A DNA stretch of 64,000 nt, taken from sequence record LC778249.1; one strand, given 5' to 3'. The notes below the pieces were generated by a model. That model was not told the DNA's origin, ran no database searches, and saw only the letters and a program-made list of their open reading frames with translations. The position numbers were made by a program, and so were the translations under genes. Positions 291-16,138 of this stretch are shown here, piece after piece. Numbering within the stretch: position 1 is the first letter of the stretch; each line of letters begins with the position of its first letter.

Positions 291-390
291 AAACAAACGT
301 GCTATCATTATCTAAGTCGTCGGAGTACGACATAAATAAAGTTAGAAACGATGTTTACAACACATGGATGATGTGTTAAGATGATTTTAA

Positions 391-442
391 GGCTGCGTTC
401 AGCAATCAAAACTTTCTTGCGGATAGAAACCAAAAGTCAGCC
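391..442 (+). ncRNA. Minimal motif RNA (helix + TTCAGCAA + anticodon-like hairpin)
   Basis: GGCTG/CAGCC terminal helix, TTCAGCAA 398-405, TTTCT-7nt-AGAAA hairpin 413-429. Confidence 0.5.
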
Positions 443-593
443 TGTTTAAAAATTAAGAAGTCTTTGTTTACACTCACTAAATAGTAGTGTATAGTAAACA
501 AAGATTGGAATGAGTTCAGCAAACAACTTAAAAAGCAAATTATTGGAAATATGCCTTAAAAGTTCATTCCGTTTCTTATTCAGTTGTTATTGG

Positions 594-678
594 GGAAGTG
601 TGGCTCAAAGGTTGAGCGGCAGACTGTTAATCTGCGGGTAATAACCCTATGCTGGTTCGAGTCCAGCCTCTTCCGCCA
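594..678 (+). tRNA. tRNA-Asn(GTT), long variable arm
   Basis: GCAGA-CTGTTAA-TCTGC anticodon arm, T arm GCTGG-TTCGAGT-CCAGC, G73 + CCA. Confidence 0.9.
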
Positions 679-702
679 ATAACAATTTTAAAGATTTACC
701 AC

Positions 703-807
703 GGATCATTACAGCAAACCAACTAACTTTTCTCTTCTAAGAAAACGATAGGGTTCGACTCCCTAGCTCTGGTAAAAGAGTCCTTGGACGGTAGTAAAAA
801 GTGATCC
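703..807 (+). ncRNA. Circularly permuted tRNA-like RNA with TACAGCAA motif (Arg TCT-like loop)
   Basis: GGATCAT/GTGATCC terminal helix, TACAGCAA, CTTCTAA loop, T arm TAGGG-TTCGACT-CCCTA, loop-closed GCTCT/AGAGT helix. Confidence 0.65.
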
Positions 808-813
808 AGTTTT

Positions 814-888
814 AGCCGTGTAGCTCATTGGTAGAGCACTCCCCTGATAAGGGAGGGGTAGACAGTTCAACTCTGTCCACGGCTACCA
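814..888 (+). tRNA. tRNA-Ile(GAT)
   Basis: AGCCGTG/CACGGCT acceptor, CTCCC-CTGATAA-GGGAG, CCA. Confidence 0.95.
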
Positions 889-908
889 AATTTAATGTTT
901 TGATTTAC

Positions 909-983
909 GCCGACTTAGTTAAATCAGAATAACTCGGGATTTGTAACCCTGAATCGTCGGAGCATAACCGGCAGTCGGCACCA
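909..983 (+). tRNA. tRNA-Thr(TGT), atypical T loop
   Basis: GCCGACT/AGTCGGC acceptor, TTTGTAA loop, T loop AGCATAA, CCA. Confidence 0.75.
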
Positions 984-1064
984 AGTTTATACACCATGAT
1001 TAAATCGGCAGATGCCTTGCTCAATGAGTTCGTTTGGTGAGTATTTTTCGAATAGAGGAATACA

Positions 1065-1559
1065 ATGAAGGATGTAGTTGGTTATGAGGGTTTATTCTCA
1101 ATAACCGAAGATGGAAAGTTATGGTCGAAACGTAGTAAACGATTTTTGACTATAATGGTAAATAAACAAGGGTACTATCAACATTGTACTAAAATCGGTG
1201 GTAGAAATGGGACTGCTAAACTGTTCAAGATTCATCGAGTTGTTGCAGAAGCATACTTGCCGAATCCCGATAATCTACCATTGGTAAATCACAAAGACGG
1301 AAACAAGTTAAATAATCATGTTTCTAATCTTGAGTGGTGTACGCACCAACATAATGTAAGACATGCTATTGATACGGGTCTTCTTGTTCAGCCAAAGGGT
1401 GAAAAATCAAAGGCGTCCACACTGACACAAGAGCAAGCCAATGAGATACGAAAATCTTACATTCCAAGGGTTATAACCTTATCTATGTTGGCCGATAAAT
1501 ATTCGGTATCTCGTAGAACAATCATCCGAGTTCTGCATAACATCAGATACAATGATTGA
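1065..1559 (+). CDS. HNH homing endonuclease (NUMOD4-like N-terminus, HNH_3, C-terminal HTH)
   Basis: KDVVGYEGLFSITEDG start; VNHKDGNKLNNHVSNLEWCT HNH motif; GAGGA RBS. Confidence 0.9.
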   Translation: MKDVVGYEGLFSITEDGKLWSKRSKRFLTIMVNKQGYYQHCTKIGGRNGTAKLFKIHRVVAEAYLPNPDNLPLVNHKDGNKLNNHVSNLEWCTHQHNVRHAIDTGLLVQPKGEKSKASTLTQEQANEIRKSYIPRVITLSMLADKYSVSRRTIIRVLHNIRYND

Positions 1560-1569
1560 TATACTAACA

Positions 1570-1738
1570 GAATTTCAGCGTGAAATCGACCGATGCCTAA
1601 AGGGCAGCGACAGATAGCCGATCCGATGCGTAGTTGGAAGAAGGGTTGCTGAAAATCGATGTGGGATCCAGACGCCCCAATCGCAGCGTCTGGTATGTAA
1701 CTCGTTACATGAATGATTTCTTTCGAGTGATTATTCAT
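1570..1738 (+). ncRNA. Candidate structured non-coding RNA
   Basis: TTTCAGCG/TGCTGAAA, CCAGACGC/GCGTCTGG, ATGTAA/TTACAT and ATGAATGAT/ATTATTCAT helices in an intergenic region. Confidence 0.45.
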
Positions 1739-1814
1739 GTGACGGTAGTTCAGTCGGTAGAACTCCAGGTTGTGATCCTGGTAGTCACGGGTTCGAAGCC
1801 CGTCCGTCACCCCA
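1739..1814 (+). tRNA. tRNA-His(GTG)
   Basis: GTGACGG/CCGTCAC, CCAGG-TTGTGAT-CCTGG, C73 + CCA. Confidence 0.95.
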
Positions 1815-1819
1815 AATAT

Positions 1820-1895
1820 GGACCTGTAGCTCAGATGGTAGAGCACCGGATTGAAAATCCGGGTGTCGTCAGTTCGATCCTGACCGGGTCCACCA
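1820..1895 (+). tRNA. tRNA-Phe(GAA)
   Basis: GGACCTG/CGGGTCC, CCGGA-TTGAAAA-TCCGG, CCA. Confidence 0.95.
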
Positions 1896-2106
1896 ATTAG
1901 TCGAGTCTTGTTGTTGGTCATGACTAACAACGTGGCGACAGGCTATAAAAAGCGATAGATTGAAGAAGGGGCGAATAACTTAAACGTTACTATTGACTTC
2001 TTCGCGCTTCTTATTACTTGGGCTCATGAGCAGAGTGATAGTTAAATCTCCTTACAACACCATGTGTTGATTATTGCCTCGGTATCTGATATTCTGGATA
2101 CCGTCT

Positions 2107-2181
2107 GGTGCATTAGCTCAGAGGTAGAGCCGCGGTTTCATACGCCGCTTGTCGGTAGTTCGAATCTACCATGCACCACCA
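2107..2181 (+). tRNA. tRNA with CAT anticodon (elongator Met likely)
   Basis: GGTGCAT/ATGCACC, GCGGT-TTCATAC-GCCGC, CCA; Met vs Ile2 not decidable by eye. Confidence 0.85.
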
Positions 2182-2226
2182 GATAATCGCGCTTAAACCG
2201 CTGATTAACACGTTTAAGCCTTCTCG

Positions 2227-2300
2227 GGGGACGTAGATAACTACACAATCGCAGGTCATTGGGACCTGAGATACGGGTGGAAATCCCGTCGTCTCCACCA
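2227..2300 (+). ncRNA. tmRNA-TLD-like mini RNA (alanine acceptor, no D stem)
   Basis: GGGGACG/CGTCTCC-A-CCA with G3:U70; unpaired 18-nt D region; capped CAGGTC/GACCTG helix; T arm ACGGG-TGGAAAT-CCCGT. Confidence 0.6.
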
Positions 2301-2435
2301 AATTTAAGTGCATTGCCCTATACACCATGAGGCGAGATAAGCCCTCGCACGAAGCAAACGAGCCGCAAGCTTGTAGCAATCAAAGGCTAGTCAGTGGGTA
2401 CTACCTGACGGGATCGCGACAGTGCATTTAAATTT
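2300..2435 (+). ncRNA. Candidate multibranched structured RNA
   Basis: 16-bp closing helix 2300-2315/2420-2435 with internal GCGAG/CTCGC and GTCAG/CTGAC hairpins. Confidence 0.45.
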
Positions 2436-2470
2436 GGTACTAAATAGACTTGCTAGTAAAGGAGTTTATA

Positions 2471-2719
2471 ATGAGTAATGATCTTGACGCTCGCGCCAAT
2501 CGTGGCTCGGGTAATCAATGCAGTAAAGCTTGGTACGACGCCCCATTGTGGAAAAATGTTGGCCCATTAGCTAGAAAGAAAGCAGCCGAAGCCGCTGCTA
2601 AAGCCGAAAAAGAAAAAGAAGTTGTTTACAACGCTACTGAAACATGTAATAATGATTCTGTTGTCGTTGAAGACGATTTAAAAGCGAAGCAACGAAAATT
2701 GTTTGCCTTTGCATACTGA
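2471..2719 (+). CDS. Hypothetical protein
   Basis: GGAG RBS, downstream of ACTAAATA at 2439-2446. Confidence 0.7.
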   Translation: MSNDLDARANRGSGNQCSKAWYDAPLWKNVGPLARKKAAEAAAKAEKEKEVVYNATETCNNDSVVVEDDLKAKQRKLFAFAY

Positions 2720-2794
2720 TCTCCGTTCATCTAACGGCTAGGATATCGCCCTTTCACGGCGAGTACACGGGTTCGAATCCCGTACGGAGAACCA
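2720..2794 (+). tRNA. tRNA-Glu(TTC)
   Basis: TCTCCGT/ACGGAGA, TCGCC-CTTTCAC-GGCGA, CCA. Confidence 0.95.
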
Positions 2795-2814
2795 ATTTTG
2801 TTAGTGCGCTATGA

Positions 2815-2890
2815 AGCGGGATGGAGAAGTCTGGAATCTCGTTAGCCTCATAAGCTAAAGGTCGGTGGTTCAAATCCACCTCCCGCTTCA
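2815..2890 (+). tRNA. Initiator-like tRNA-Met(CAT), no encoded CCA
   Basis: fMet-like D arm TGGAGAAGTCTGGAATCTCG, CTCATAA loop, T arm GGTGG-TTCAAAT-CCACC; acceptor extended by 12 bp (2803-2814/2888-2899). Confidence 0.8.
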
Positions 2891-2912
2891 TAGCGTACTA
2901 AATAAAGAATAC

Positions 2913-3004
2913 GGAGACGCTGCAATGACGGTGGTATTGCACCAGACTGTAAATCTGGCCCCACAGGGTGAACATTGTAGGTTCGAATCCTACCGGCTCC
3001 ACCA
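2913..3004 (+). tRNA. tRNA-Tyr(GTA)
   Basis: CCAGA-CTGTAAA-TCTGG, long variable arm, CCA. Confidence 0.9.
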
Positions 3005-3033
3005 AATTTAATAAGTCAATAACGAGGTATACA

Positions 3034-3120
3034 ATGATTCCGATAGTGTTCCTATGTGATAATGATCACAGTGGTTGTCACCCAAACGGATGTTATTATT
3101 GTCCACATTATTACTTGTAG
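3034..3120 (+). CDS. 28-aa Cys/His-rich micropeptide (not in ORF track)
   Basis: GAGGT RBS then MIPIVFLCDNDHSGCHPNGCYYCPHYYL*. Confidence 0.55.
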   Translation: MIPIVFLCDNDHSGCHPNGCYYCPHYYL

Positions 3121-3127
3121 TTTAAAC

Positions 3128-3202
3128 GGTGCATTAGTATAATGGCTATTATTCGTGACTGTCTATCACAGGATACGGGTTCGATTCCCGTATGTACCGC
3201 CA
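3128..3202 (+). tRNA. tRNA-Asp(GTC)
   Basis: GGTGCAT/ATGTACC, CTGTCTA loop, G73 + CCA. Confidence 0.92.
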
Positions 3203-3268
3203 GTTTCTGCCTAGCAGGAAAGAGAACTTACCCGACAAAGTTTAGTTCTTAGCTCTTTGATTATCGCT

Positions 3269-3416
3269 GGATTCACTACAGCAAAACCTAAAATACAAAA
3301 CAAACTCTACTATTAAATGGATAGCACTCCTTTACTTCGGTAGTTGGATGTGCGGCTGAGAGGGAACAGCATATAAAAGTAACGGCGGGTTAGTCACCGC
3401 TCCCATATGTGAATCC
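3269..3416 (+). ncRNA. Large motif RNA (helix + TACAGCAA)
   Basis: GGATTCAC/GTGAATCC terminal helix, TACAGCAA 3277-3284, several internal hairpins. Confidence 0.55.
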
Positions 3417-3486
3417 GAAGACTTGCGATAACCACTTGCAAATAGTGGTTATTCTAATGTATAATCACGATTGTATATTAGAATTT

Positions 3487-3562
3487 GGGGATATAGCTCA
3501 GTTGGGAGAGCACTAGCCTTGCAAGCTGGGGGTCGTGGGTTCGAGTCCCATTGTCTCCACCA
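3487..3562 (+). tRNA. tRNA-Ala(TGC)
   Basis: GGGGATA/TGTCTCC with G3:U70, CTTGCAA loop, CCA. Confidence 0.95.
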
Positions 3563-3572
3563 AATTTAAATC

Positions 3573-3648
3573 GCGTGATTAACTCAGTTGGTAGAGTGTC
3601 AGCCTTCCAAGCTGTTCGTCGCCCGTTCGAGTCGGGTATCACGCTCCA
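3573..3648 (+). tRNA. tRNA-Gly(TCC)
   Basis: GCGTGAT/ATCACGC, CTTCCAA loop, U73 + CCA. Confidence 0.93.
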
Positions 3649-3655
3649 AATTAAC

Positions 3656-3730
3656 GCGCAGGTAGCCAAGCGGTAAGGCAAGTGATTGCAAATCACTTTA
3701 TCGTCTGTTCGATCCAGATCCTGTGCTCCA
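3656..3730 (+). tRNA. tRNA-Cys(GCA)
   Basis: GCGCAGG/CCTGTGC, TTGCAAA loop, U73 + CCA. Confidence 0.93.
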
Positions 3731-3746
3731 CATTGAGAAATAATTT

Positions 3747-4172
3747 ATGAGCGCACCTAGTTATGCGCTGTTCATGAAGAACGGCGATTGTGTCGGGAAC
3801 TGCTTTATCAACTGCGGTTGGTGGCATGATGAACCAAGAACACTGAGACAGATTATCCGGTATACCGAAACCGATGAATGTCCTATCGACTATGATAGTG
3901 TAATCGCGTATGGTGTTACCTATAGCAATGACTTGGAATTCGAGCTTCTGAAAGCAGAAGAAACGGAAGCTAAGTTGAGAGAAATTGCTGAAAATAAGCG
4001 TAAGCAAAGTTGGGAAGATTTACATCAGAAGATGATCGAACGGACGAAACCGATTGATCGAATGCTTCCTGAATTGATCGCTGCTGAGATATGCGGAGTT
4101 CAGCCAATGACTGGTCATGTTCCTAACGTTTTTTCGTTGAAGGTAGTTTACGGCGATGATATTTCTTGCTAA
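3747..4172 (+). CDS. Protein with C-terminal T4 gp23 Gol-peptide-like segment
   Basis: DRMLPELIAAEICGVQPMTGHVPNVFSLKVVYG resembles T4 gp23 RRAIPNLIAFDICGVQPMNSPTGQVFALRAVYG. Confidence 0.75.
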   Translation: MSAPSYALFMKNGDCVGNCFINCGWWHDEPRTLRQIIRYTETDECPIDYDSVIAYGVTYSNDLEFELLKAEETEAKLREIAENKRKQSWEDLHQKMIERTKPIDRMLPELIAAEICGVQPMTGHVPNVFSLKVVYGDDISC

Positions 4173-4548
4173 GATACGTTATATGAAAAGCGAATACATG
4201 GGTTCATCTAAATCATTCGATACCATTAAACTGGTAGAAGCAGAAGATGCAGACGAGGCCGATAGCAAAGTTCGCGAATATTACAACGACAAAAGTTCAG
4301 ATTATGGCACATATTATTCCGTTCTGGACGTTTCGATAGAAGAACCGATTAGGTGATTTATGAGTAAAGAATCCGAATTGAGATTCACGCTGAAAGAACT
4401 GAAACGAATGGTTCAATTGGCGGAAGAGAATAACACAACACTGGTTGATGTCAAATATACCTCAGGGTGTATCGGCTCAATCGTCATGGCAAAACCGGTG
4501 TGTAAAGACGGCGAATTCGAATCTGTAACTGATGTCGATAGCTGGTAA
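4156..4548 (+). other. Two small hypothetical CDS (4156-4356, 4360-4548)
   Basis: Tandem, closely packed + strand ORFs. Confidence 0.65.
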
Positions 4549-4557
4549 AAAGATTAT

Positions 4558-4631
4558 AGGGGCGTAGCAAATCGGTTATGCGGCGGATTCCAAATCCGTT
4601 GAGGTGGGTTCGACTCCTACCGCCCCTGCCA
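4558..4631 (+). tRNA. tRNA-Trp(CCA)
   Basis: AGGGGCG/CGCCCCT, TTCCAAA loop, CCA. Confidence 0.93.
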
Positions 4632-4637
4632 AACAAC

Positions 4638-4713
4638 GCGCCGTTAGCTTAGTTGGTAGAGCATCGGACTTTTAATCCGAGGGTCGATGGTTCGAGTCCA
4701 TCACGGCGCACCA
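4638..4713 (+). tRNA. tRNA-Lys(TTT)
   Basis: GCGCCGT/ACGGCGC, CTTTTAA loop, CCA. Confidence 0.95.
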
Positions 4714-4737
4714 AACAATCGCTTTGAAAGGTGAAAT

Positions 4738-4842
4738 CGCTAATGCTTTTAAGTGCAATGGGATAGCTTCTCGAAAGTCGGGATATAGATTGCCCCGTCG
4801 GTATTGATTTCATGATAGGTTCGATTCCTATCCTTAGCGTCT
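4738..4842 (+). ncRNA. tRNA-like RNA with a T arm but no D or anticodon arm (T4 species 1/2 genre)
   Basis: GATAGG-TTCGATT-CCTATC followed by CTTAGCG, pairing with CGCTAA at the 5' end. Confidence 0.5.
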
Positions 4843-4848
4843 AATTAT

Positions 4849-4923
4849 CTCGGGTTAGGCAAGTGGTATGTCGCCTGGTTTGGGACCAGGTCGTCGAGTG
4901 TTCGATTCACTCACCCGAGACCA
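4849..4923 (+). tRNA. tRNA-Pro(TGG)
   Basis: CTCGGGT/ACCCGAG, CCTGG-TTTGGGA-CCAGG, CCA. Confidence 0.93.
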
Positions 4924-4929
4924 AATAGA

Positions 4930-5176
4930 GAATGCCAACTATGTCCTAGGAAACTTAGTTGGAAGTCCAGCTGAAGGTCCCTCTCTCGCGAATAGCGATG
5001 ATGCACCAGGAAGGGGCGAATGATTCACTTGTGGGTCATTTCAAAGAGTTCTGATAGAGTTCTTTGAATTGATTCATGCGTTGCATCGCATTGAATGAAG
5101 TGGGGTTACACAAAGTAGGATTAAGTTACCGAAACGATACGACGATGACCCACGTTAAACGTTAATATTCGTCCCA
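4930..5176 (+). ncRNA. Candidate large structured RNA
   Basis: Nested helices 5013-5021/5167-5175, 5031-5039/5145-5153, 5040-5047/5061-5068, 4935-4941/4956-4962; no ORF. Confidence 0.5.
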
Positions 5177-5182
5177 GTTTAT

Positions 5183-5258
5183 AGGGGTATCGCCAAGTTG
5201 GAAAGGCAACGGATTTTGATTCCGTCATTCGCTGGTTCGAGTCCAGCTACCCCCGCCA
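5183..5258 (+). tRNA. tRNA-Gln(TTG)
   Basis: ACGGA-TTTTGAT-TCCGT, T arm GCTGG-TTCGAGT-CCAGC, G73 + CCA. Confidence 0.92.
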
Positions 5259-5280
5259 ATTTCAACTAAGAGAATTTATC

Positions 5281-5445
5281 ATGATTGAATCTGTTATTGT
5301 GAAAATGCGTAAAGAAGCTGAGAGCTTGCGTAATGATACCCTCGTTAGTATGCGTGAAGGCGTTACTAATGACATCGTTGCTAAGTATCTTGACAAATAC
5401 GCCGACGAGTTGGAAAGAGCTGTTATGAATCCCATTGCTCTTTAA
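5281..5445 (+). CDS. 54-aa hypothetical protein (below ORF-track cutoff)
   Basis: MIESVIVKMRKEAESL... open frame between tRNAs. Confidence 0.55.
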   Translation: MIESVIVKMRKEAESLRNDTLVSMREGVTNDIVAKYLDKYADELERAVMNPIAL

Positions 5446-5532
5446 ATTATCAAACGGGATGCCGATGCGCGTGTGTAGCCAGATCGTAATGATCAAGATT
5501 CACGATGTCATAGAGGCATGACAAAGAATTAA

Positions 5533-5626
5533 GGAAGGTCAACCCGATAGCCGGCGACGGGAGCGGTCTTGAAAACCGTCGAGGGTTAACAGCCCCTTGT
5601 GAGTTCGACCCTCACACCTTCCGCCA
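5533..5626 (+). tRNA. tRNA-Ser(TGA)
   Basis: GGAAGGT/ACCTTCC, CTTGAAA loop, long variable arm, CCA. Confidence 0.92.
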
Positions 5627-5672
5627 ATTTAAACTAACCCATACGCGGTAGCGTAAAGGAGAACATCGGTAG

Positions 5673-6107
5673 ATGGAAATGTTAGACATGTGTCGCTGTT
5701 ATGTAGAGGTTGCTAGATACGCAATCAACATGCAACGATCAAAAAAGATTGATCACTGGTCATTTGATCCAGTTGAATATCTGAAACAGCACAGAACGAT
5801 TCACCTTGACTTTGGTCGCGGTACGATGAAGACTAGAGCCGCGTTTGATATCGCACAGGATCACAACGGTGTTCTTGTTACGATTAATCAAGCTCATGCT
5901 AGATGGATTCAGCGTGAAGTTTTCGGTAATACAAAAGGTAAAACCCGAATAACTTTTTCAAAGGGTGCTGTTGCGGAAATCCGAGAAAACAGTTATGATG
6001 TTGTTGTTATCGATGAACCAGCTTTACATAAACCGCATCTGCTAGAAGCGATTTATGATGCTTGTATTGACAAGAAGATTCAAAACATCATACTGATTGG
6101 ACGATGA
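5673..6107 (+). CDS. Hypothetical protein, degenerate P-loop NTPase-like
   Basis: GRGTMKT (imperfect Walker A) and VVVIDEP (Walker B-like). Confidence 0.45.
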   Translation: MEMLDMCRCYVEVARYAINMQRSKKIDHWSFDPVEYLKQHRTIHLDFGRGTMKTRAAFDIAQDHNGVLVTINQAHARWIQREVFGNTKGKTRITFSKGAVAEIRENSYDVVVIDEPALHKPHLLEAIYDACIDKKIQNIILIGR

Positions 6108-6330
6108 TATGAAAATTACCAAAGTAGATATCGAACTGCAATCCCGATTCGTTGACAAAGGCGATTCATACGGATTCGGTACAACTCAATCCGCTGCCAA
6201 GTGTTCTACTGCTCAAATTGAACGACTTCTGAAACTTGGCTTGATTAAGATGTGTCGCGATGTCAAATGCGTTGCACAAAAGGATTTTCGTGGCTTCGTT
6301 AGCAGTGGTACGCACTATTGCAAAGCTTAA
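6097..6330 (+). CDS. Hypothetical protein
   Basis: + strand ORF overlapping the stop of the previous gene. Confidence 0.6.
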   Translation: MDDDMKITKVDIELQSRFVDKGDSYGFGTTQSAAKCSTAQIERLLKLGLIKMCRDVKCVAQKDFRGFVSSGTHYCKA

Positions 6331-6434
6331 AGAAAGAAATCGAGGAAAACGTCAGAGCGTCGTTTGAACTATCTGGACAAAGAGTTACTGATACTCAATG
6401 GGAACAGATTAAACGAGCTGCTGAATATATTAAC

Positions 6435-6522
6435 GGAGAAATGACAGAGAGGCCGAACGTAGCGGATTGCTAATTCGTAGGCCCGCAAGGGTCCGTGGGT
6501 TCGAATCCCACTTTCTCCTCCA
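6435..6522 (+). tRNA. tRNA-Ser(GCT)
   Basis: GGAGAAA/TTTCTCC, TTGCTAA loop, long variable arm, CCA. Confidence 0.92.
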
Positions 6523-6528
6523 AACAAC

Positions 6529-6612
6529 GCGGATGTGGCGAAATTGGCAGACGCACTAGATTTAGGTTCTAGCGCCATAGGCGTGTCGGTTCGAGTCCGA
6601 CCATCCGCACCA
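6529..6612 (+). tRNA. tRNA-Leu(TAG)
   Basis: GCGGATG/CATCCGC, CTAGA-TTTAGGT-TCTAG, CCA. Confidence 0.95.
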
Positions 6613-6620
6613 GATAAATA

Positions 6621-6645
6621 AAAGGGAGCTTCGGCTCCCTTTTTT
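6621..6645 (+). terminator. Rho-independent terminator
   Basis: GGGAGC-TTCG-GCTCCC followed by T run. Confidence 0.9.
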
Positions 6646-6660
6646 CATAGGAGAATATCA

Positions 6661-7053
6661 ATGCCATCATTTACTGAGTTCAAAGGTAAAGAACAAACTA
6701 AAGCTGTTGGAGAACTCATTTCCAAGCTTCTGAAAAGCGTGGCCTACGTTCATCATCAACACCTAACTACTACCATTTATAGCCGTCACAAAGCTCTTGG
6801 AGAGTATTACGAGGGGCTTCCATCGCTTATCGATAGTTTCGCAGAAAGTTCTATTGCTCGGGGATACGATCAAAGCTTTACTGCCACTCACGCGGAGGTA
6901 GAAGTTGAATTAATGATTGACAACTTCCTACAAGATTGTACTATGGTGCATGAGTACCTAGAGACAAAACGGCATTTCGATCTAGTCAATGCTCTAGAAG
7001 ATATCATGACCTTTATGACTTCAATTAGATATAAATTGAATCTTAAAGGTTGA
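6661..7053 (+). CDS. Ferritin-like four-helix protein (DUF5856-like)
   Basis: HHQHLTT...HKALGEYYEGL..LIDSFAE pattern typical of T4-like phage ferritin-like proteins. Confidence 0.6.
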   Translation: MPSFTEFKGKEQTKAVGELISKLLKSVAYVHHQHLTTTIYSRHKALGEYYEGLPSLIDSFAESSIARGYDQSFTATHAEVEVELMIDNFLQDCTMVHEYLETKRHFDLVNALEDIMTFMTSIRYKLNLKG

Positions 7054-7086
7054 CAATAGCTAAGAGCTGTGTTATCATGGCTCTTA
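7050..7086 (+). promoter_or_regulatory. Early stem-loop promoter
   Basis: TTGACA-N17-TATCAT with TAAGAGC/GCTCTTA inverted repeat around the -10. Confidence 0.75.
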
Positions 7087-7095
7087 TAAATCAAA

Positions 7096-7170
7096 GGCCC
7101 CGTAACATAAGGGTAAATGTGCTCGCCTCATAAGCGAAGAAAAGCGGTTCGAGTCCGCTCGGGGCCACCA
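7096..7170 (+). tRNA. tRNA(CAT), Ile2 (lysidine)-like
   Basis: GGCCCCG/CGGGGCC acceptor resembling bacterial Ile2, CTCATAA loop, CCA. Confidence 0.85.
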
Positions 7171-11400: not shown

Positions 11401-12834
11401 ATGTCTGCTTTTATGAACGCAATGGTGCAAGCTCAAGCCCGCACTGCTAACGGTGCTGTTACTAACTACACCACCGGTGATAAGTGTCTGAATCTGTTTT
11501 CTCAGATTGGTTCCTCTCGCGGGAAAGATCTGACTAGCATGTTCCAGGAAGCTTATACCGAATCTCCGGATTGGGCTGTGCGCATTCTGCAATGGGCTCG
11601 CGATATTCGCGGTGGCGCTGGTGAGCGTGAGCAATTCATCCGTCTGCTGAAATTCCTGGCTAATCGCCACGAAGTTGACGCGACCGTTGTTTTGATGAAC
11701 ACTCCGGAAATCGGTCGCTTCAAAGACGTGGTAGCAATGATTGACTCTCCGATTGGCGAGGCTGCTGTTGCGATCATGGTTGACGCTATCGCGATCAAAG
11801 GTAATGGTCTTGCTGCAAAGTGGGCACCTCGTAAGGGCAAAGAAGCTGGTATTCTGGCTAAGGCAATGAGCCTGACTGCCAAAGAGTATCGTCAACTGGT
11901 CGTTGGTCTGTCGAATACCGTTGAACAAAAGATGTGTGCTCGTCAATGGGATGGCATCGACTTCGGTAAGCTGCCGTCTGTTGCTTCTGCTCGTTATCAG
12001 AAAGCATTCCTGAAAAACGCTAACTCTCGTTATGTCGCTTATCTGGAATCTCTGAAAAAGGGTGATGCCAAGATCAACGCTAGTGCGGTATATCCGTACG
12101 ACATGATCAAGTCTCTGCGTAATGGTTCTTCTGTTGCTGCTGACGCACAATGGAAAGCACAACGCGACTGGATGGCTGGTTCTACTGAGAACGTGATCGC
12201 AATGGTCGACGTTTCTGGCTCCATGAGCTGTCCGACCGCTGTTGCTGGTCTGTCTGCTATGGATATCGCGATCTCTCTGGGTCTGTATATCGGCGAACGT
12301 TCCCGTGGTGTGTTCCAGAATGAGATTATTACATTCGATGATAATCCGTGCTTCTACAACATCAAGCAGAAAGGTGACAATCTGAAAGCGATGGTCGAGC
12401 ATCTGAGTCGTGCTCCGTGGGGTGGTTCTACCAACTTCACTGGTGCATTCGATATCATTCTGGATCGCGCTGTTCGCAACCGTGTTCCCCAGTCTGATAT
12501 GCCGACTATGATGGTTGTTCTGTCTGACATGGAATTTAACATGGCTGATGGTGGTTACAGCCGTCGTCGTTACGGTGTTGGTGAACAAACCAACTTCGAA
12601 TCGATCAAAGCGAAGTACCGCAAAGCTGGTTACGAAATGCCCAAGCTGGTGTTCTGGAACCTGTGTCCGCGCCCGACTAATAATCCGGTGACTAAGGATG
12701 ACAACGGTACCGCGCTTGTGTCCGGTTTCAGCCCTTCTATCATGGAGACAATCCTGAGTGCGAAGGACTTCAACCCGCTGCAAATCATGCTCGACAAGAT
12801 CATGAGTGACCGATACGTCGGTATCGACTACTAA
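11401..12834 (+). CDS. DUF2828 + vWA protein (Ro60/TROVE-like architecture)
   Basis: WARDIRGGAGER, LAAKWAPR, helical N-terminal region; MIDAS motif VDVSGSM, GGSTNF, VLSDMEF. Confidence 0.8.
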   Translation: MSAFMNAMVQAQARTANGAVTNYTTGDKCLNLFSQIGSSRGKDLTSMFQEAYTESPDWAVRILQWARDIRGGAGEREQFIRLLKFLANRHEVDATVVLMNTPEIGRFKDVVAMIDSPIGEAAVAIMVDAIAIKGNGLAAKWAPRKGKEAGILAKAMSLTAKEYRQLVVGLSNTVEQKMCARQWDGIDFGKLPSVASARYQKAFLKNANSRYVAYLESLKKGDAKINASAVYPYDMIKSLRNGSSVAADAQWKAQRDWMAGSTENVIAMVDVSGSMSCPTAVAGLSAMDIAISLGLYIGERSRGVFQNEIITFDDNPCFYNIKQKGDNLKAMVEHLSRAPWGGSTNFTGAFDIILDRAVRNRVPQSDMPTMMVVLSDMEFNMADGGYSRRRYGVGEQTNFESIKAKYRKAGYEMPKLVFWNLCPRPTNNPVTKDDNGTALVSGFSPSIMETILSAKDFNPLQIMLDKIMSDRYVGIDY

Positions 12835-12835
12835 G

Positions 12836-12861
12836 AAAAGGCACCTTCGGGTGCCTTTTTT
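12836..12861 (+). terminator. Rho-independent terminator, identical copy 1 of 4
   Basis: AAGGCACC-TTCG-GGTGCCTTTTT also at 16058, 26061 and 32718; each followed within a few nt by TTGACA. Confidence 0.92.
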
Positions 12862-12918
12862 GTTTGACAACTGGTATGAGTCATGTAATAATGCCAATAT
12901 CTAAACAAGGAGAACATT

Positions 12919-14311: not shown

Positions 14312-14649
14312 GATCTTATATCTGCTGGTGATTGGCCACTTTGTTGCCGATTACACGTTACAACCGGATAGCGTCGCAAGGGGGGAAGCATCCAGTCAAC
14401 TCTCCACTCTATGGAGTGCATTGGATTTACTGGCTCACTGCCCACGCATCTACTCATGCAGTCGTGGTATATGTCGTAACCCAGAGCGTCTGGCTAAGTT
14501 TGGCAGAGCTTATTAGCCACTGGATTATAGATCTGATGAAGTGCAAGAACAAGATCAACTTGTTCGCGGATCAAATGCTGCACATTGTCTGTAAAGTTTT
14601 TATCGTTATCGCGTATTTCTACTTGACAGGTACTCCGATGTCGCTATAA
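14304..14649 (+). pseudogene. DUF3307-like membrane protein split by frameshift in a G6 run
   Basis: GHFVADYTLQ in one frame; GKHP...AHASTHA...HWIIDLMKC...DQMLH in another; junction at G6 14380-14385. Confidence 0.75.
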
Positions 14650-14659
14650 TGGCGACATC
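14623..14659 (+). promoter_or_regulatory. Early stem-loop promoter (PeSL-like)
   Basis: TTGACA-N16-TATAAT with GATGTCGC/GCGACATC inverted repeat flanking the -10. Confidence 0.85.
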
Positions 14660-14678: not shown

Positions 14679-15137
14679 ATGAAATCTTTAATCAAGTTTC
14701 TGTTTCCGCAAAGCTATGCTGATATTGTGGAAGAGGGTAAACTGACTGGCGTCAGTGCCGAGTCGAAACGTCGCGACGATCTCGCAAAGAAAGATTCCGA
14801 GTGTCGCCGCAATTACGAACGTCCGCTTGGTGTTCCGATGATCTCAATCGACGGCAATGGCATCGTTCGTGTTGTTGTTAACACTGATTATGTTCATGGT
14901 GTGACACTATCGGTAGACCTCATTTCCGGTAAAGAAATGATAGACTTTACCATGCAACTTCGATATAGTGATGAAATGATCAAAACGATCATGCAGAACG
15001 ATATCAAAGACGTTTATACTCTGATTACCAGAGGTAACGGCAAGATTCTGAAAGACAGTGGCGAAATACAGTCAACTATTTGTAGCCTCATGCTTGCTGT
15101 GAAAAAGTTTAAAGAAAAAGGTTTACAAACTAAGTAA
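14679..15137 (+). CDS. Hypothetical protein
   Basis: GAGG RBS after promoter. Confidence 0.7.
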   Translation: MKSLIKFLFPQSYADIVEEGKLTGVSAESKRRDDLAKKDSECRRNYERPLGVPMISIDGNGIVRVVVNTDYVHGVTLSVDLISGKEMIDFTMQLRYSDEMIKTIMQNDIKDVYTLITRGNGKILKDSGEIQSTICSLMLAVKKFKEKGLQTK

Positions 15138-15154
15138 ACTATGAGAAGATTGTT

Positions 15155-15283
15155 TTGTTGACGCGATTAGCTCAGTGGGAGAGCGCCTCTGATCGCAGAG
15201 AAGTATCGGGACCGGTTCGAATCCGGTATAGTGTGGGCACACCGAGAAACGTCGCTGGTTCGAATCCAGCATCGCGTCAACAA
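15155..15283 (+). ncRNA. Expanded tRNA-like RNA with two T arms
   Basis: 13-bp acceptor-like helix, D arm GCTCAGTGGGAGAGC, T arms ACCGG-TTCGAAT-CCGGT and GCTGG-TTCGAAT-CCAGC; no CCA. Confidence 0.7.
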
Positions 15284-15420
15284 ACAGCATTATGCTGGCG
15301 GTTCGTCTAGTGGTAGGACACTGTAAAATTCATTCTGATAAGAATGTATTCCGCAACAAATACTCGCCTGTTAAGCCTGTAACCTGGGTTCGAATCCCAG
15401 ACCGCCAGCATAGTGTTGTT
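15283..15420 (+). ncRNA. Expanded tRNA-like RNA with inserted TTCCGCAA motif module
   Basis: 20-bp acceptor-like helix, D arm, CATTCT-GATA-AGAATG hairpin then TTCCGCAA, CTGTTAA loop, T arm CTGGG-TTCGAAT-CCCAG. Confidence 0.7.
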
Positions 15421-15428
15421 AAAAATTT

Positions 15429-15549
15429 GGGGAAGTAGCCGAATTGGTATAGGCAATAGTCGAAAAATCGGATTCTGTCAAGAATCTTTACGGCAACTAA
15501 ATCGAAATCAAACTGTCGTATGTGGGTTCGAGTCCCACCTTCCCCTCCA
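15429..15549 (+). ncRNA. Expanded tRNA-like RNA with inserted TACGGCAA motif module, CCA end
   Basis: GGGGAAG/CTTCCCC-T-CCA, D arm, GGATTCT-GTCA-AGAATCT then TACGGCAA, T arm GTGGG-TTCGAGT-CCCAC. Confidence 0.72.
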
Positions 15550-15605
15550 ATCTTGTTAAGTCAAGCTATCGAGAGATAGAGTTAAACCACCTGTAGGAAA
15601 TAAAG

Positions 15606-15884
15606 ATGGAAATTCTTAGCGAAAAGAAACTGCGTAATCTCACTACCGAGCGTCTGAATGCACTGCGTAAAGTAGTTCTGAAATCTCGGGCTGCTGCTGA
15701 ATATCACGCTGAACATGATTCTAGCTCCCAAGCTGACATGGAACGCGCTGCTACTCTGGCTGAGTATTACGATCTGATCAAATCTGTCATGGAAGAACGG
15801 GAACACATCGAGCGCCCGGCGAAAGACAAATCTCGTCCTCGTCGTGATGGTCGAAATGCAAAACGATCATGGGAAGATGATTGA
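15606..15884 (+). CDS. Hypothetical protein
   Basis: AGGA RBS, basic C-terminus. Confidence 0.65.
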   Translation: MEILSEKKLRNLTTERLNALRKVVLKSRAAAEYHAEHDSSSQADMERAATLAEYYDLIKSVMEEREHIERPAKDKSRPRRDGRNAKRSWEDD

Positions 15885-16059
15885 TCAGTTAAAATACTTT
15901 CGTTATCAACACCTACCGGAACATCTGCAACCATTCTCTAAGCCGTTTCATGACTTAGCCGAGAAGATGATTGCGGAATTACCGGACAACGAACAACGTA
16001 AGATCGGCTTACAAAAGCTAATCGAAGCGAAGGATTGTTTTGTTCGAGCTAAACTATAA
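15877..16059 (+). CDS. Small helical-hairpin protein, Acb2/Tad1-hairpin-like
   Basis: YFRYQHLP...LPDNEQRKIGLQKLIEAKDCFVRA pattern. Confidence 0.45.
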   Translation: MIDQLKYFRYQHLPEHLQPFSKPFHDLAEKMIAELPDNEQRKIGLQKLIEAKDCFVRAKL

Positions 16060-16138
16060 GGCACCTTCGGGTGCCTTTTTTATTGACATCGATTTTCAGC
16101 CTGCTATAGTGGTCACATAGAAACGAGAGGACTTAATC

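What the first reader, a model, noticed from the sequence alone, without database searches (positions are those of the whole stretch)
15155..15549. Satellite cluster of three enlarged tRNA-like genes 7 kb from the main tRNA array
Three back-to-back elements have canonical D and T arms but anticodon regions enlarged to about 50-70 nt. Two lack CCA and have acceptor helices extended to 13 and 20 bp; the third keeps a 7-bp acceptor, U73 and CCA. They lie in an early transcription unit about 2.3 kb after the DUF2828 gene. Standard tRNA finders would probably miss them or call them pseudogenes.
Basis: seen in the sequence. Interest (0 to 1): 0.7.

Follow-up and report, generated by a model that had tools for sequence, protein, structure and literature searches.

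The report
tRNA-shaped Y-RNA-like phage RNAs
Three conserved, tRNA-shaped but non-decoding RNAs of an Aeromonas T4-like phage; two carry the helix-plus-UWCNGCAA signature that marks small RNAs encoded beside Ro60-like genes in many phages, so they are probably RNA partners of the phage's own Ro60-like protein.

Summary
Window 15150-15549 (an Aeromonas Chrysonvirus, identical to phiWae14) has three back-to-back tRNA-like elements with canonical D and T arms, in one early transcription unit.

They are not decaying. E1 and E2 are 85-94% identical across four sister lineages, where the flanking ORFs are 67-78%. Their helices show compensatory changes.

They are not decoding tRNAs: none has a 7-nt anticodon loop with U33, and E3's pseudo-anticodon differs between orthologues.

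E2 and E3 carry a module in the anticodon position: a 6-bp helix with apex CU-GNNA-AG, then single-stranded U-W-C-N-G-C-A-A. The same module sits in tRNA-like RNAs of KVP40 and unrelated phage contigs. As an open stem joining the 5' and 3' ends, it marks ~65-nt RNAs next to phage DUF2828 genes: 11-fold enriched within 500 nt downstream, with 62 units on the gene strand and 0 opposite.

The window's DUF2828 protein (11401-12834, 2.3 kb upstream, same strand) has the Ro60 fold. Two such units match Rfam YrlA at 39-42 bits, below threshold.

Best reading: E2 and E3 are tRNA-ordered, circularly permuted relatives of YrlA-type Y RNAs. E1's role is unclear. Binding is inferred, not shown. One stand-alone unit (L233) also weakly matches the Dictyostelium Class I RNA model.

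The parts
11401..12834 (+). Gene for a Ro60-like protein (Pfam DUF2828 + DUF7788/vWA), the proposed protein partner
   Evidence: Pfam hits. AlphaFold model with pLDDT 85.5. The top 7 Foldseek PDB hits are all Ro60, TM 0.62/0.58. The top Swiss-Prot hits are mouse, human and worm Ro60. Mycobacteriophage homologues are annotated 'Ro-like RNA binding protein'.
12840..12892 (+). Intrinsic terminator (hairpin 12840-12855 plus a T run) followed by a promoter-like site (12864-12892); these separate the Ro60-like gene from the next unit
   Evidence: Sequence read; promoter scan.
14623..14650 (+). Perfect sigma-70 consensus promoter (TTGACA-16-TATAAT), the likely start of the transcript that carries E1-E3
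   Evidence: 12 of 12 matches.
15150..15287 (+). E1: tRNA-shaped RNA with a long terminal helix, a D arm, a 5-bp hairpin with a tetraloop, a branched variable domain holding a second T-arm-like hairpin, and a true T arm. No CCA and no module.
   Evidence: 95.8% of cells paired, 8 compensatory pairs. Rfam tRNA 40.4 bits. 85-92% identity across lineages. No homologue outside the Aeromonas group.
15283..15420 (+). E2: tRNA-shaped RNA with a 20-bp terminal helix, a D arm, the module, an anticodon-loop-like hairpin (loop CUGUUAA, 15368-15374) and a T arm. No CCA.
   Evidence: 92-94% identity across lineages, core 93-96%. Model R1 finds homologues in KVP40 at 58-68 bits and in L165 at 48.7 bits.
15331..15356 (+). 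E2 module: 6-bp helix capped by GAUA (15331-15346), then UAUUCCGCAA (15347-15356)
   Evidence: Alignment A6: 98% paired, the outer pair covaries. Model R2 scores it 46 bits.
15429..15549 (+). E3: tRNA-shaped RNA with a 7-bp acceptor, U73 and CCA, D and T arms, and a 5-bp stem (15456-15460 with 15512-15516) enclosing the module
   Evidence: Rfam tRNA 46.3 bits with a 50-nt insertion. Alignment. Compensatory changes in the T and D stems.
15471..15496 (+). E3 module: 6-bp helix capped by GUCA (15471-15486), then UUUACGGCAA (15487-15496)
   Evidence: A6. R2 scores it 46.5 bits.
16058..16077 (+). Intrinsic terminator ending the unit that holds E1-E3 and the small ORFs around them
390..444 (+). Stand-alone unit a: a terminal stem enclosing GUUCAGCAA, the open-stem form of the same module
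   Evidence: Conserved in the same phage group.
506..571 (+). Stand-alone unit b: a terminal stem enclosing GUUCAGCAA and a second AAGCAA
703..807 (+). Stand-alone unit c: a terminal stem, UUACAGCAA, a hairpin and a T-arm-like hairpin, lying just after tRNA-Asn

Best explanation
E1-E3 are stable, non-decoding, tRNA-shaped RNAs cut out of an early polycistronic transcript.

E2 and E3 are Y-RNA-type RNAs. Where a tRNA has its anticodon arm or loop, they carry a short helix (apex CU-GNNA-AG) followed by single-stranded U-W-C-N-G-C-A-A. I propose this module is the docking site for the phage's Ro60-like protein, encoded 2.3 kb upstream on the same strand.

The tRNA-like body would do two things:
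- Let host tRNA enzymes (RNase P, 3' trimming, CCA addition for E3, modification) mature and stabilise the RNA.
- By analogy with Rsr-YrlA-PNPase and the Thermus phage phiLo Ro60-Yrl-PNPase complex, tether a host exoribonuclease or tRNA-handling enzyme to the Ro ring.

The resulting particle would act in surveillance, decay or repair of structured RNA (tRNA, rRNA) during infection.

Topologically, E2 and E3 are circular permutations of the YrlA-like units found beside other phage Ro60-like genes. Here the tRNA ends are open and the Ro-type stem is capped. There the stem is open and the acceptor is capped.

E1 has no module. It is a lineage-specific third tRNA-shaped RNA of the same cluster, with no assigned role.

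Shown: conservation, structure, the module family, its genomic linkage to Ro60-like genes, and the Ro60 fold of the protein. Inferred: binding, nuclease recruitment and biological role.
For: (1) Conservation and structure.
- E1 and E2 are 85-94% identical across four lineages, against 67-78% for the flanking ORFs.
- Compensatory pairs occur in all E1 helices but one and in the T arms.
- The long terminal stem of the E2 type is kept in KVP40 K0 and K1 with different sequence.

(2) The module is a family.
- The pattern shared by E2 and E3 recurs inside tRNA-like RNAs in unrelated phage contigs and KVP40.
- It never occurs in a tRNA-like context in 596 Gb of cellular genomes.
- The helix covaries: the outer pair is GC, AU, CG or UA; 0 of 500 shuffles match.

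(3) Linkage to Ro60-like genes.
- In 80 loci fetched by the protein alone, T[AT]CNGCAA reaches 2.4/kb in the 500 nt after the stop codon, against 0.21/kb elsewhere. 57 of 80 loci and 10 of 25 sequence clusters have it.
- Strict stem-plus-motif units: 62 on the gene strand and 0 on the other, with 36 within -2 to +2 kb of the gene.
- Loci without any tRNA gene (L188, L228, L196) still have the units.
- L165, L135 and L159 have tRNA-shaped, module-bearing RNAs 0.5-2.8 kb from the gene on the same strand.

(4) The same helix and the same spacing, AAGAAU-N3-UWCNGCAA with AUUCUG opposite, occur in capped and open forms.

(5) Units with the order T arm, closed acceptor, D arm are hit by Rfam YrlA at 41.9 and 39.1 bits.

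(6) The protein has the Ro60 fold.

(7) Precedent.
- A phage Ro60 binds two phage Y-like RNAs and host PNPase (PMC12135203).
Against: - No binding or expression data exist. The complex prediction was not run by the tool. Public runs gave only DNA-like contigs of relatives.
- In this phage a terminator and seven small ORFs separate the Ro60-like gene from the cluster. In KVP40 the distance is about 12 kb.
- Three more units sit 10 kb upstream, at the head of the tRNA array. The RNAs could therefore be tied to tRNA arrays as much as to the gene.
- About half of the Ro60-like lineages sampled show no unit within 500 nt.
- E1-E3 fail the Rfam YrlA threshold (17 bits) and lack the GNCGAA motif of canonical YrlA.
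- E1 has no module at all.
Confidence: 0.55

Rival explanations
1. tRNA-array accessory RNAs unrelated to the Ro60-like protein. Examples: decoys or sponges for host anticodon nucleases or tRNA-modifying enzymes, or partners of another conserved factor. On this view the Ro60-like gene is merely a frequent neighbour because it also lives in tRNA regions.
For: - All tRNA-shaped, module-bearing RNAs lie in tRNA arrays on the tRNA strand.
- Window units a-c and the KVP40 cluster are 10-12 kb from the Ro60-like gene.
- Many units and E2/K4 hold anticodon-loop mimics: CUGUUAA, CUUUUAA, CUGUAAA.
- The module apex CU-GNN-AA-G resembles an anticodon loop shortened by one nucleotide.
Against: - Units flank Ro60-like genes in loci with no tRNA at all.
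- The enrichment peaks within 500 nt of the gene, and all 62 strict units are on its strand.
Confidence: 0.2
2. Processing or stability elements of the early mRNA. The long helices of E1 and E2 (RNase III-type) and the tRNA-like shapes (RNase P) would serve mainly to cut the polycistronic transcript and set the expression of the flanking small ORFs. The RNAs themselves would be by-products.
For: - The cluster sits between two ORFs of one promoter-terminator unit.
- The terminal helices are 11-20 bp.
- The outer E1 and E2 stems overlap by 5 nt, so they cannot both form.
Against: A cutting site does not need near-invariant internal sequence (E2 core 93-96%), nor a sequence motif shared with free-standing small RNAs of unrelated phages.
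Confidence: 0.1
3. Intron-containing tRNA genes whose insert is removed, for example by a nuclease plus the phage RNA ligase, to give decoding tRNAs.
For: - tRNAscan-based annotations call E3 tRNA-Leu with an intron (PX29) or tRNA-Val (Aeh1).
- In KVP40 element K3, the loop begins AUGUUAA. Removing the next 47 nt would restore a perfect Asn anticodon arm.
Against: - E3's would-be anticodon is AAA, CAA or CAC among orthologues, with G33.
- The insert sits at different positions: the anticodon loop in E3, between the D arm and an anticodon-like hairpin in E2, and the variable region in E1.
- It is too small for group I introns.
- The insert sequence is more conserved than the 'exons', and it occurs in RNAs with no tRNA body at all.
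Confidence: 0.07
4. Decaying tRNA pseudogenes, or a miniature tmRNA-like tagging RNA.
For: - Some annotation pipelines flag them as pseudo or OTHER tRNA (PMC1524935 lists 3 pseudo-tRNAs in Aeh1).
- GCA of the motif is followed by short in-frame stop-terminated frames in several members. E2 gets a weak tmRNA hit of 13 bits.
Against: - Conservation exceeds that of neighbouring genes, and there is covariation.
- The short frames are not conserved: E3 and K2 have no stop, and the changes are non-synonymous while third positions stay invariant.
- ARAGORN finds no tmRNA.
- G3:U70 is present in only some orthologues.
Confidence: 0.03

Closest known systems
YrlA-type bacterial and phage Y RNAs (Rfam RF02553; Chen et al. 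2014, PMC4201824)
   Same: - Encoded near a Ro60-type gene on the same strand.
- 80-130 nt long.
- A tRNA-like D/T elbow, plus a helix with an adjacent short single-stranded motif that occupies the anticodon-stem position.
- Related phage units are hit by the YrlA model at 39-42 bits.
   Different: - E1-E3 keep the natural tRNA order: open acceptor ends and a capped Ro-type helix. YrlA has the permuted order T, closed acceptor, D.
- The motif is UWCNGCAA, not GNCGAAN0-1G.
- The protein is of the DUF2828 branch, not Pfam TROVE.
- E1-E3 score only 17 bits against a threshold of 69.
Thermus phage phiLo Ro60 with Yrl1/Yrl2 (PMC12135203)
   Same: A phage-encoded Ro60-fold protein with several phage-encoded small RNAs next to the gene. 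It was shown to bind them and host PNPase. This is the mechanistic template used here.
   Different: - Its RNAs are stem-bulge-stem with a CGAA motif. They lie upstream of the gene and are not tRNA-ordered.
- No sequence relation was tested here.
Dictyostelium Class I RNAs (Rfam RF01414; Kjellin et al. 2021, PMC7919456)
   Same: The stand-alone phage units share these features:
- A short covarying stem joining the 5' and 3' ends.
- A conserved motif directly after the 5' strand. The Rfam consensus is CCUUACAGCAA; the phage form is YU(U/A)CAGCAA.
- A 3' end of ...CUG.
- About 60-65 nt and GC about 0.35.
   Different: - There is one hit of 25 bits against a threshold of 41.5.
- Class I RNAs are reported as unique to Dictyostelia and bind the RRM protein Rnp1A.
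- E2 and E3 hold only the capped, permuted form of the module inside a tRNA body.
- Whether dictyostelids encode a DUF2828 protein was not tested.
T4 stable RNAs species 1 and 2 (rnaC, rnaD)
   Same: Small stable RNAs of unknown function in the tRNA region of a T4-type phage. rnaC has a T arm and a terminal stem.
   Different: No module, no D arm, and no match to models R1-R3.

Membership tests
Decoding tRNA | Cloverleaf with D and T arms that reaches the Rfam tRNA threshold | tested here: met
   E1 scores 40.4 bits and E3 46.3 bits (threshold 29), but only with 56- and 50-nt insertions. E2 is not detected.
Decoding tRNA | 7-nt anticodon loop with U33, and an anticodon conserved among orthologues | tested here: not met
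   E1 has a tetraloop hairpin. E2 has the capped module. E3 reads C-G-AAA, CAA or CAC in different phages.
Decoding tRNA | 7-bp acceptor, discriminator base and 3' CCA (encoded or added) | tested here: inconclusive
   E3 meets this (U73 or G73 plus CCA). E1 and E2 have 11-20-bp helices and no encoded CCA. Processing and CCA addition are not testable here.
YrlA / Y RNA | Encoded within about 4 kb of a Ro60 orthologue, on the same strand | tested here: met
   2.3 kb downstream on the same strand, in all five lineages. The protein has the Ro60 fold.
YrlA / Y RNA | tRNA-like D and T stem-loops able to form the elbow | tested here: met
   Canonical GG in the D loop and UUCGAAU/UUCGAGU T loops in E1-E3.
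YrlA / Y RNA | Permuted order (T arm, closed acceptor-like stem-loop, D arm), with the 5'/3' stem in the anticodon-stem position | tested here: not met
   E1-E3 are in tRNA order with open acceptor ends. The permuted order is found in related units in L169, L233, L170, L174, L175 and L157.
YrlA / Y RNA | GNCGAAN0-1G motif near the 5' end | tested here: not met
   Absent from E1-E3. UWCNGCAA occupies the equivalent position after the helix.
YrlA / Y RNA | Rfam RF02553 gathering score (69 bits) | tested here: not met
   17.2 bits across the E1/E2 junction. Related units score 41.9 and 39.1 bits.
YrlA / Y RNA | Bound by the Ro60-type protein | not testable with these tools
Dictyostelium Class I RNA | [quoted passage not shown] | tested here: not met
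   E2 and E3 are 121-138 nt and hold the helix in capped form. Window units a and b and 58 phage units do fit this feature.
Dictyostelium Class I RNA | Rfam RF01414 gathering score (41.5 bits) | tested here: not met
   The only hit seen is 25 bits, on a stand-alone unit of L233.
tmRNA | tRNA-like domain with G3:U70, plus a conserved tag reading frame ending in a stop | tested here: not met
   ARAGORN finds none. Rfam gives 13 bits. The frames are not conserved.
Group I intron in a tRNA gene | A self-splicing intron of about 200 nt or more in the anticodon loop | tested here: not met
   Inserts are 45-66 nt. There is no Rfam intron hit.

The most novel reading that the evidence does not exclude
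The helix-plus-UWCNGCAA RNAs are one ancient family of partners for DUF2828-type Ro60 paralogues. The family would span phages, in open-stem, YrlA-like permuted and tRNA-ordered forms, and the Class I RNAs of Dictyostelium. Class I RNAs are so far thought unique to social amoebae and have no mechanism. On this reading they would be Y-type RNAs of a DUF2828 protein. The phage series would show step by step how a Y RNA arises from a tRNA by inserting a protein-binding helix and then permuting the ends.
Probability: 0.25. Interest if true: 0.9.

Novelty: new variant of a known kind. Interest (0 to 1): 0.72.

Why it matters
DUF2828 proteins occur in at least 701 sequenced phage genomes (T4-like, FelixO1-like, Listeria, Staphylococcus, Campylobacter and Mycobacterium phages). 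They are mostly annotated 'hypothetical'.

Three things follow if they are Ro60-fold proteins with their own class of partner RNAs, recognisable by a simple signature:
- These proteins get a testable function.
- Several 'pseudo' or 'intron-containing' tRNA annotations in phage genomes are explained.
- The known diversity of Y RNAs widens, with a different motif and a non-permuted tRNA order.

Phage Ro-RNA particles may hijack host exoribonucleases. That bears on how large tRNA-rich phages manage RNA damage and host defence.

The resemblance to Dictyostelium Class I RNAs, if real, would give a mechanistic handle on an abundant eukaryotic RNA class of unknown mechanism.

Tried and rejected
- **tmRNA-like tagging.** GCA as a resume codon with short frames (AN*, AKI*, the E2 12-mer) was rejected. 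The frames are absent in E3 and K2, the changes are non-synonymous, and the DNA is invariant at third positions.
- **Short cloverleaf in E1.** ARAGORN's tRNA-Ala uses the first T arm. It is broken by 1-nt deletions in three lineages. The long form has a compensatory A-U to U-A change.
- **YrlA-like fold across the E1/E2 junction** (the Rfam 17-bit hit). Not favoured, because each element's own terminal helix is supported.
- **DNA-level motif.** It is not a promoter, MotA box or late promoter. All 62 strict units lie on one strand and the helix covaries, which point to RNA.
- **Homology to T4 rnaC/rnaD.** None found.
- **A host-genome target or homologue of the invariant E2 stretch.** The exact 21-mer is absent from metagenome contigs. 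15-mer hits in viral contigs were only the known phages plus chance.
- **My first regex screen** found the module near only 1 of 80 Ro60-like genes. That was a false negative of a too-strict pattern, corrected with model R2 and the core motif.
- **Protein-RNA complex prediction.** Not executed by the tool, so it is no evidence either way.
- **Public sequencing runs.** They gave no RNA evidence.
- **Dictyostelid DUF2828 gene.** AFDB and Atlas searches could not tell whether dictyostelids have one, because organisms were masked or only viral taxa were listed. The paper naming the four Class I-binding proteins is not held.
Full report
**Source and setting**

The window is an Aeromonas T4-like phage of the genus Chrysonvirus. 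Bases 15100-15620 are 100% identical to phiWae14 and 99.6% to phiAS5. They are 81-85% identical to avDM12-TAAL, Ah1, PX29 and Aeh1.

The three elements fill one 470-nt gap between an ORF ending at 15137 and an rI.1-like ORF starting at 15606. A perfect sigma-70 promoter lies at 14623-14650 and an intrinsic terminator at 16058-16077. The RNAs therefore look co-transcribed with small early genes.

Existing records label parts of the cluster inconsistently:
- phiWae14: tRNA-Ala
- PX29: tRNA-OTHER plus tRNA-Leu with an intron
- Aeh1: tRNA-Val
- phiAS5, Ah1, avDM12: nothing

**Checking the observation**

ARAGORN reports 20 ordinary tRNAs at 594-7170, plus a 75-nt tRNA-Ala(cgc) inside E1. The Rfam tRNA model hits E1 (15161-15278, 40.4 bits) and E3 (15429-15546, 46.3 bits) with 56- and 50-nt insertions. 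It misses E2.

Consensus folding of five lineages gives these structures:
- **E1**: a terminal helix of 11 bp, plus 6 bp beyond a bulged U. Then a D arm, a 5-bp hairpin with a tetraloop, a branched domain (stem UCGR/YCGA enclosing a second T-arm-like hairpin and a 3-bp hairpin) and the true T arm.
- **E2**: a 20-bp terminal helix, a D arm, a 6-bp hairpin, a conserved single strand, a weak hairpin with loop CUGUUAA, and a T arm.
- **E3**: a 7-bp acceptor, U73, CCA, D and T arms, and a 5-bp stem enclosing about 50 nt.

Support for the folds:
- In E1, 95.8% of cells pair and 8 pairs show changes on both sides. 0 of 500 shuffles reach this, and slid controls give 0-3 such pairs.
- E2 is almost invariant, so within this group only its T arm covaries.
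- ARAGORN's short E1 cloverleaf is broken by 1-nt deletions in three lineages. The long form keeps a compensatory A-U to U-A change.

**Not pseudogenes, not decoding tRNAs**

Identity of the window to avDM12, Ah1, PX29 and Aeh1:

| Segment | Identity |
|---|---|
| E1 | 85-92% |
| E2 | 92-94% (core 93-96%) |
| E3 | 76-79% |
| upstream ORF | 67-69% |
| downstream ORF | 77-78% |

Single-base indels rule out coding. None of the three has a 7-nt loop with U33. The triplet that tRNAscan took for E3's anticodon is AAA, CAA or CAC in different phages, while the acceptor stem stays the same.

**The shared module**

The E2 and E3 inserts share AUUCUG-NN-AAGAAU-N3-UWCNGCAA. This is a 6-bp helix with apex CU-GNNA-AG, followed by a single-stranded motif.

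I scanned public collections for this pattern. It turned up inside other tRNA-like RNAs of unrelated phage contigs (L053/L054/L135/L154, L068, L162) and of vibriophage KVP40 (L158). It also occurs in mini-elements consisting of a 6-bp stem ending in GCCA (L077, L157, L159, L162).

All of them lie in tRNA arrays on the tRNA strand. The 59 hits in 596 Gb of bacterial and archaeal genomes are chance matches outside any tRNA-like context.

In an 18-sequence alignment the helix is 98% paired. Its outer pair is G-C, A-U, C-G or U-A, and 0 of 500 shuffles match.

Results from the covariance models:
- A model of the module (R2) finds further copies in L165, L162, L068 and KVP40.
- A model of E2 (R1) scores KVP40 elements K4, K1 and K0 at 67.6, 67.2 and 58.6 bits, and L165 at 48.7 bits. 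Ordinary tRNAs score about 20-30 bits.
- K0 and K1 keep long terminal helices of different sequence.
- E1 has no detectable relative outside the Aeromonas group.

**The neighbouring protein**

Window 11401-12834 encodes a DUF2828 + DUF7788/vWA protein.
- It has no sequence match in the PDB.
- Its AlphaFold model (pLDDT 85.5) matches full-length Ro60 as the top seven PDB hits, with TM 0.62/0.58.
- It also matches mouse, human and worm Ro60 in Swiss-Prot.
- Homologues occur in 701 phage records. The mycobacteriophage ones are annotated 'Ro-like RNA binding protein'.

**Linkage of the motif to Ro60-like genes**

I fetched 80 phage loci by this protein alone, each with 10-kb flanks. A strict regex found the capped module only in Aeh1. 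Model R2 then showed many weak hits piled up just after the gene.

Counting the core motif T[AT]CNGCAA on the gene strand gives the following:
- 2.4 per kb in the first 500 nt after the stop codon, against 0.21 per kb elsewhere.
- 57 of 80 loci have it, 32 of them with two or more copies.
- After clustering the downstream DNA, 10 of 25 clusters have it.

Next I required a closing stem of at least 6 bp that starts AG/GG and ends C(U/C)G:
- This gives 62 units on the gene strand and none on the other.
- 36 of them lie within -2 to +2 kb of the gene.

Loci with no tRNA gene at all (L188, L228, L196) still carry the units. The linkage is therefore to the gene, not merely to tRNA arrays.

The 58 distinct units have a median length of 65 nt and GC of 0.35. 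Their form is (U/A)AA-AG(R)AU...stem | U(A/U)CAGCAA | variable loop | stem...AUYCUG.

**Circular permutation and the YrlA connection**

The capped module of E2 and E3 is the same helix and motif as the open stem of these units. It has the same AAGAAU-N3-UWCNGCAA spacing, and the two ends are joined by two nucleotides.

Several units (L169, L233, L170, L174, L175, L168, L157) hold, inside the loop, a T arm, a closed acceptor-like hairpin and a D arm. That is the permuted tRNA-like domain that defines YrlA. Rfam YrlA hits two of them at 41.9 and 39.1 bits, below its threshold of 69.

E2, E3, the KVP40 elements, L165a/b, L135a/b, L068 and L162a have the same parts in tRNA order. They are circular permutations of the YrlA-like form.

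The published criteria for YrlA are:
- encoded within 4 kb of Ro60, on the same strand;
- a tRNA-like domain;
- a short motif (GNCGAAN0-1G) after the 5' strand of the terminal stem (PMC4201824).

E2 and E3 meet the first two. They have a different motif and a different order.

A phage Ro60 that binds two phage Y-like RNAs and host PNPase has been shown for Thermus phage phiLo (PMC12135203).

**Mechanism proposed**

The module docks the Ro60-like protein. The tRNA-like body gives maturation and stability through host tRNA enzymes, and probably recruits an exoribonuclease or tRNA-handling enzyme. The particle would act on structured RNA during infection. All of these steps are inference.

Caveats:
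- The Ro60-like gene has its own terminator at 12840-12861.
- Three further units (390-444, 506-571, 703-807) lie at the head of the tRNA array.
- KVP40's cluster is about 12 kb from its gene.
- About half of the sampled Ro60-like lineages lack a nearby unit.
- E1 lacks the module.

No expression or binding evidence could be obtained.

**An unexpected resemblance**

In a focused Rfam search, a stand-alone unit of L233 matched the Dictyostelium Class I RNA model at 25 bits (threshold 41.5). The model consensus is a stem, then CCUUACAGCAA, an A/U-rich loop, the returning stem strand, and UG.

Class I RNAs are described as follows (PMC7919456):
- 42-65 nt long;
- a short covarying stem joining the ends;
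- an 11-nt motif next to the 5' strand;
- a conserved 5' G and 3' CUGU;
- GC 32-41%;
- unique to Dictyostelia.

The phage units fit every structural point.

Whether this is homology, and whether dictyostelids encode a DUF2828 protein, could not be tested here. From memory, Pfam describes DUF2828 as found in eukaryotes and viruses. The Aeh1 record notes similarity to an Arabidopsis protein.

**Verdict**

The pseudogene and intron readings are rejected. The best-supported reading is a new, tRNA-ordered variant of Y-RNA-like RNAs tied to a DUF2828-type Ro60 paralogue.

Noticed in passing
window 390-444, 506-571, 703-807 (+): Three stand-alone stem-plus-UWCAGCAA units lie at the head of the main tRNA array. 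Unit c also holds a T-arm-like hairpin. They are unannotated and conserved at 77-92% in the same phage group.
   Followed up: partly
window 909-980 (+): The Rfam tRNA model hits here at 43.1 bits, but ARAGORN does not call it. It may be an extra or atypical tRNA in the array.
   Followed up: no
L158 (KVP40) 5459-5310, 5071-4921, 4814-4702, 4691-4571, 3033-2893 (-): KVP40 carries five enlarged tRNA-like RNAs with the module (K0-K4). In K3 the loop starts AUGUUAA, so removing 47 nt would restore an Asn anticodon arm.
   Followed up: partly
L162 3431-3393 (-), L077 8483-8521, L157 4904-4942, L159 13444-13406 (-): These are mini-elements: a 6-bp stem GGGACA/UGUCCC followed by GCCA, with the capped module inside and no D or T arm. 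Each lies directly after a tRNA.
   Followed up: no
L135 823-880, L242 9795-9860, L157 2650-2715, L162 ~3375-3320 (-), L068 2230-2290: Many stand-alone units enclose a perfect anticodon stem-loop mimic. Most have loop CUUUUAA (Lys); others have CUGUUAA (Asn) or CUGUAAA (Tyr). They could be decoys or remnants of the tRNA ancestor.
   Followed up: no
L243 12649-13122 (+): A phage-encoded tmRNA (Rfam 70.9 bits) lies 1.2 kb downstream of a Ro60-like gene and its two units.
   Followed up: no
L135 891-946 (+): A type I hammerhead ribozyme (38.1 bits, above threshold) lies inside a phage tRNA array.
   Followed up: no
L135 13600-14160 (+): About 560 nt of noncoding, apparently structured sequence lies between the Ro60-like gene and its tRNA-like RNAs. 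Nothing in Rfam matches it.
   Followed up: no
L040 (phi-pp2) 646-740 and 741-825 (+): Two ordinary tRNAs (Glu-UUC and Tyr-GUA by eye) are missing from the GenBank annotation.
   Followed up: no
window 15285-15297: A small hairpin, CAGCA-UUA-UGCUG, sits at the E1/E2 junction. The outer 5 nt of the E1 and E2 terminal helices overlap (15283-15287), so the two extensions are mutually exclusive in one transcript.
   Followed up: partly
80 Ro60-like loci, 5-8 kb downstream of the gene: A second cluster of 23 strict units lies 5-8 kb downstream in a subset of loci. I did not examine what lies there.
   Followed up: no
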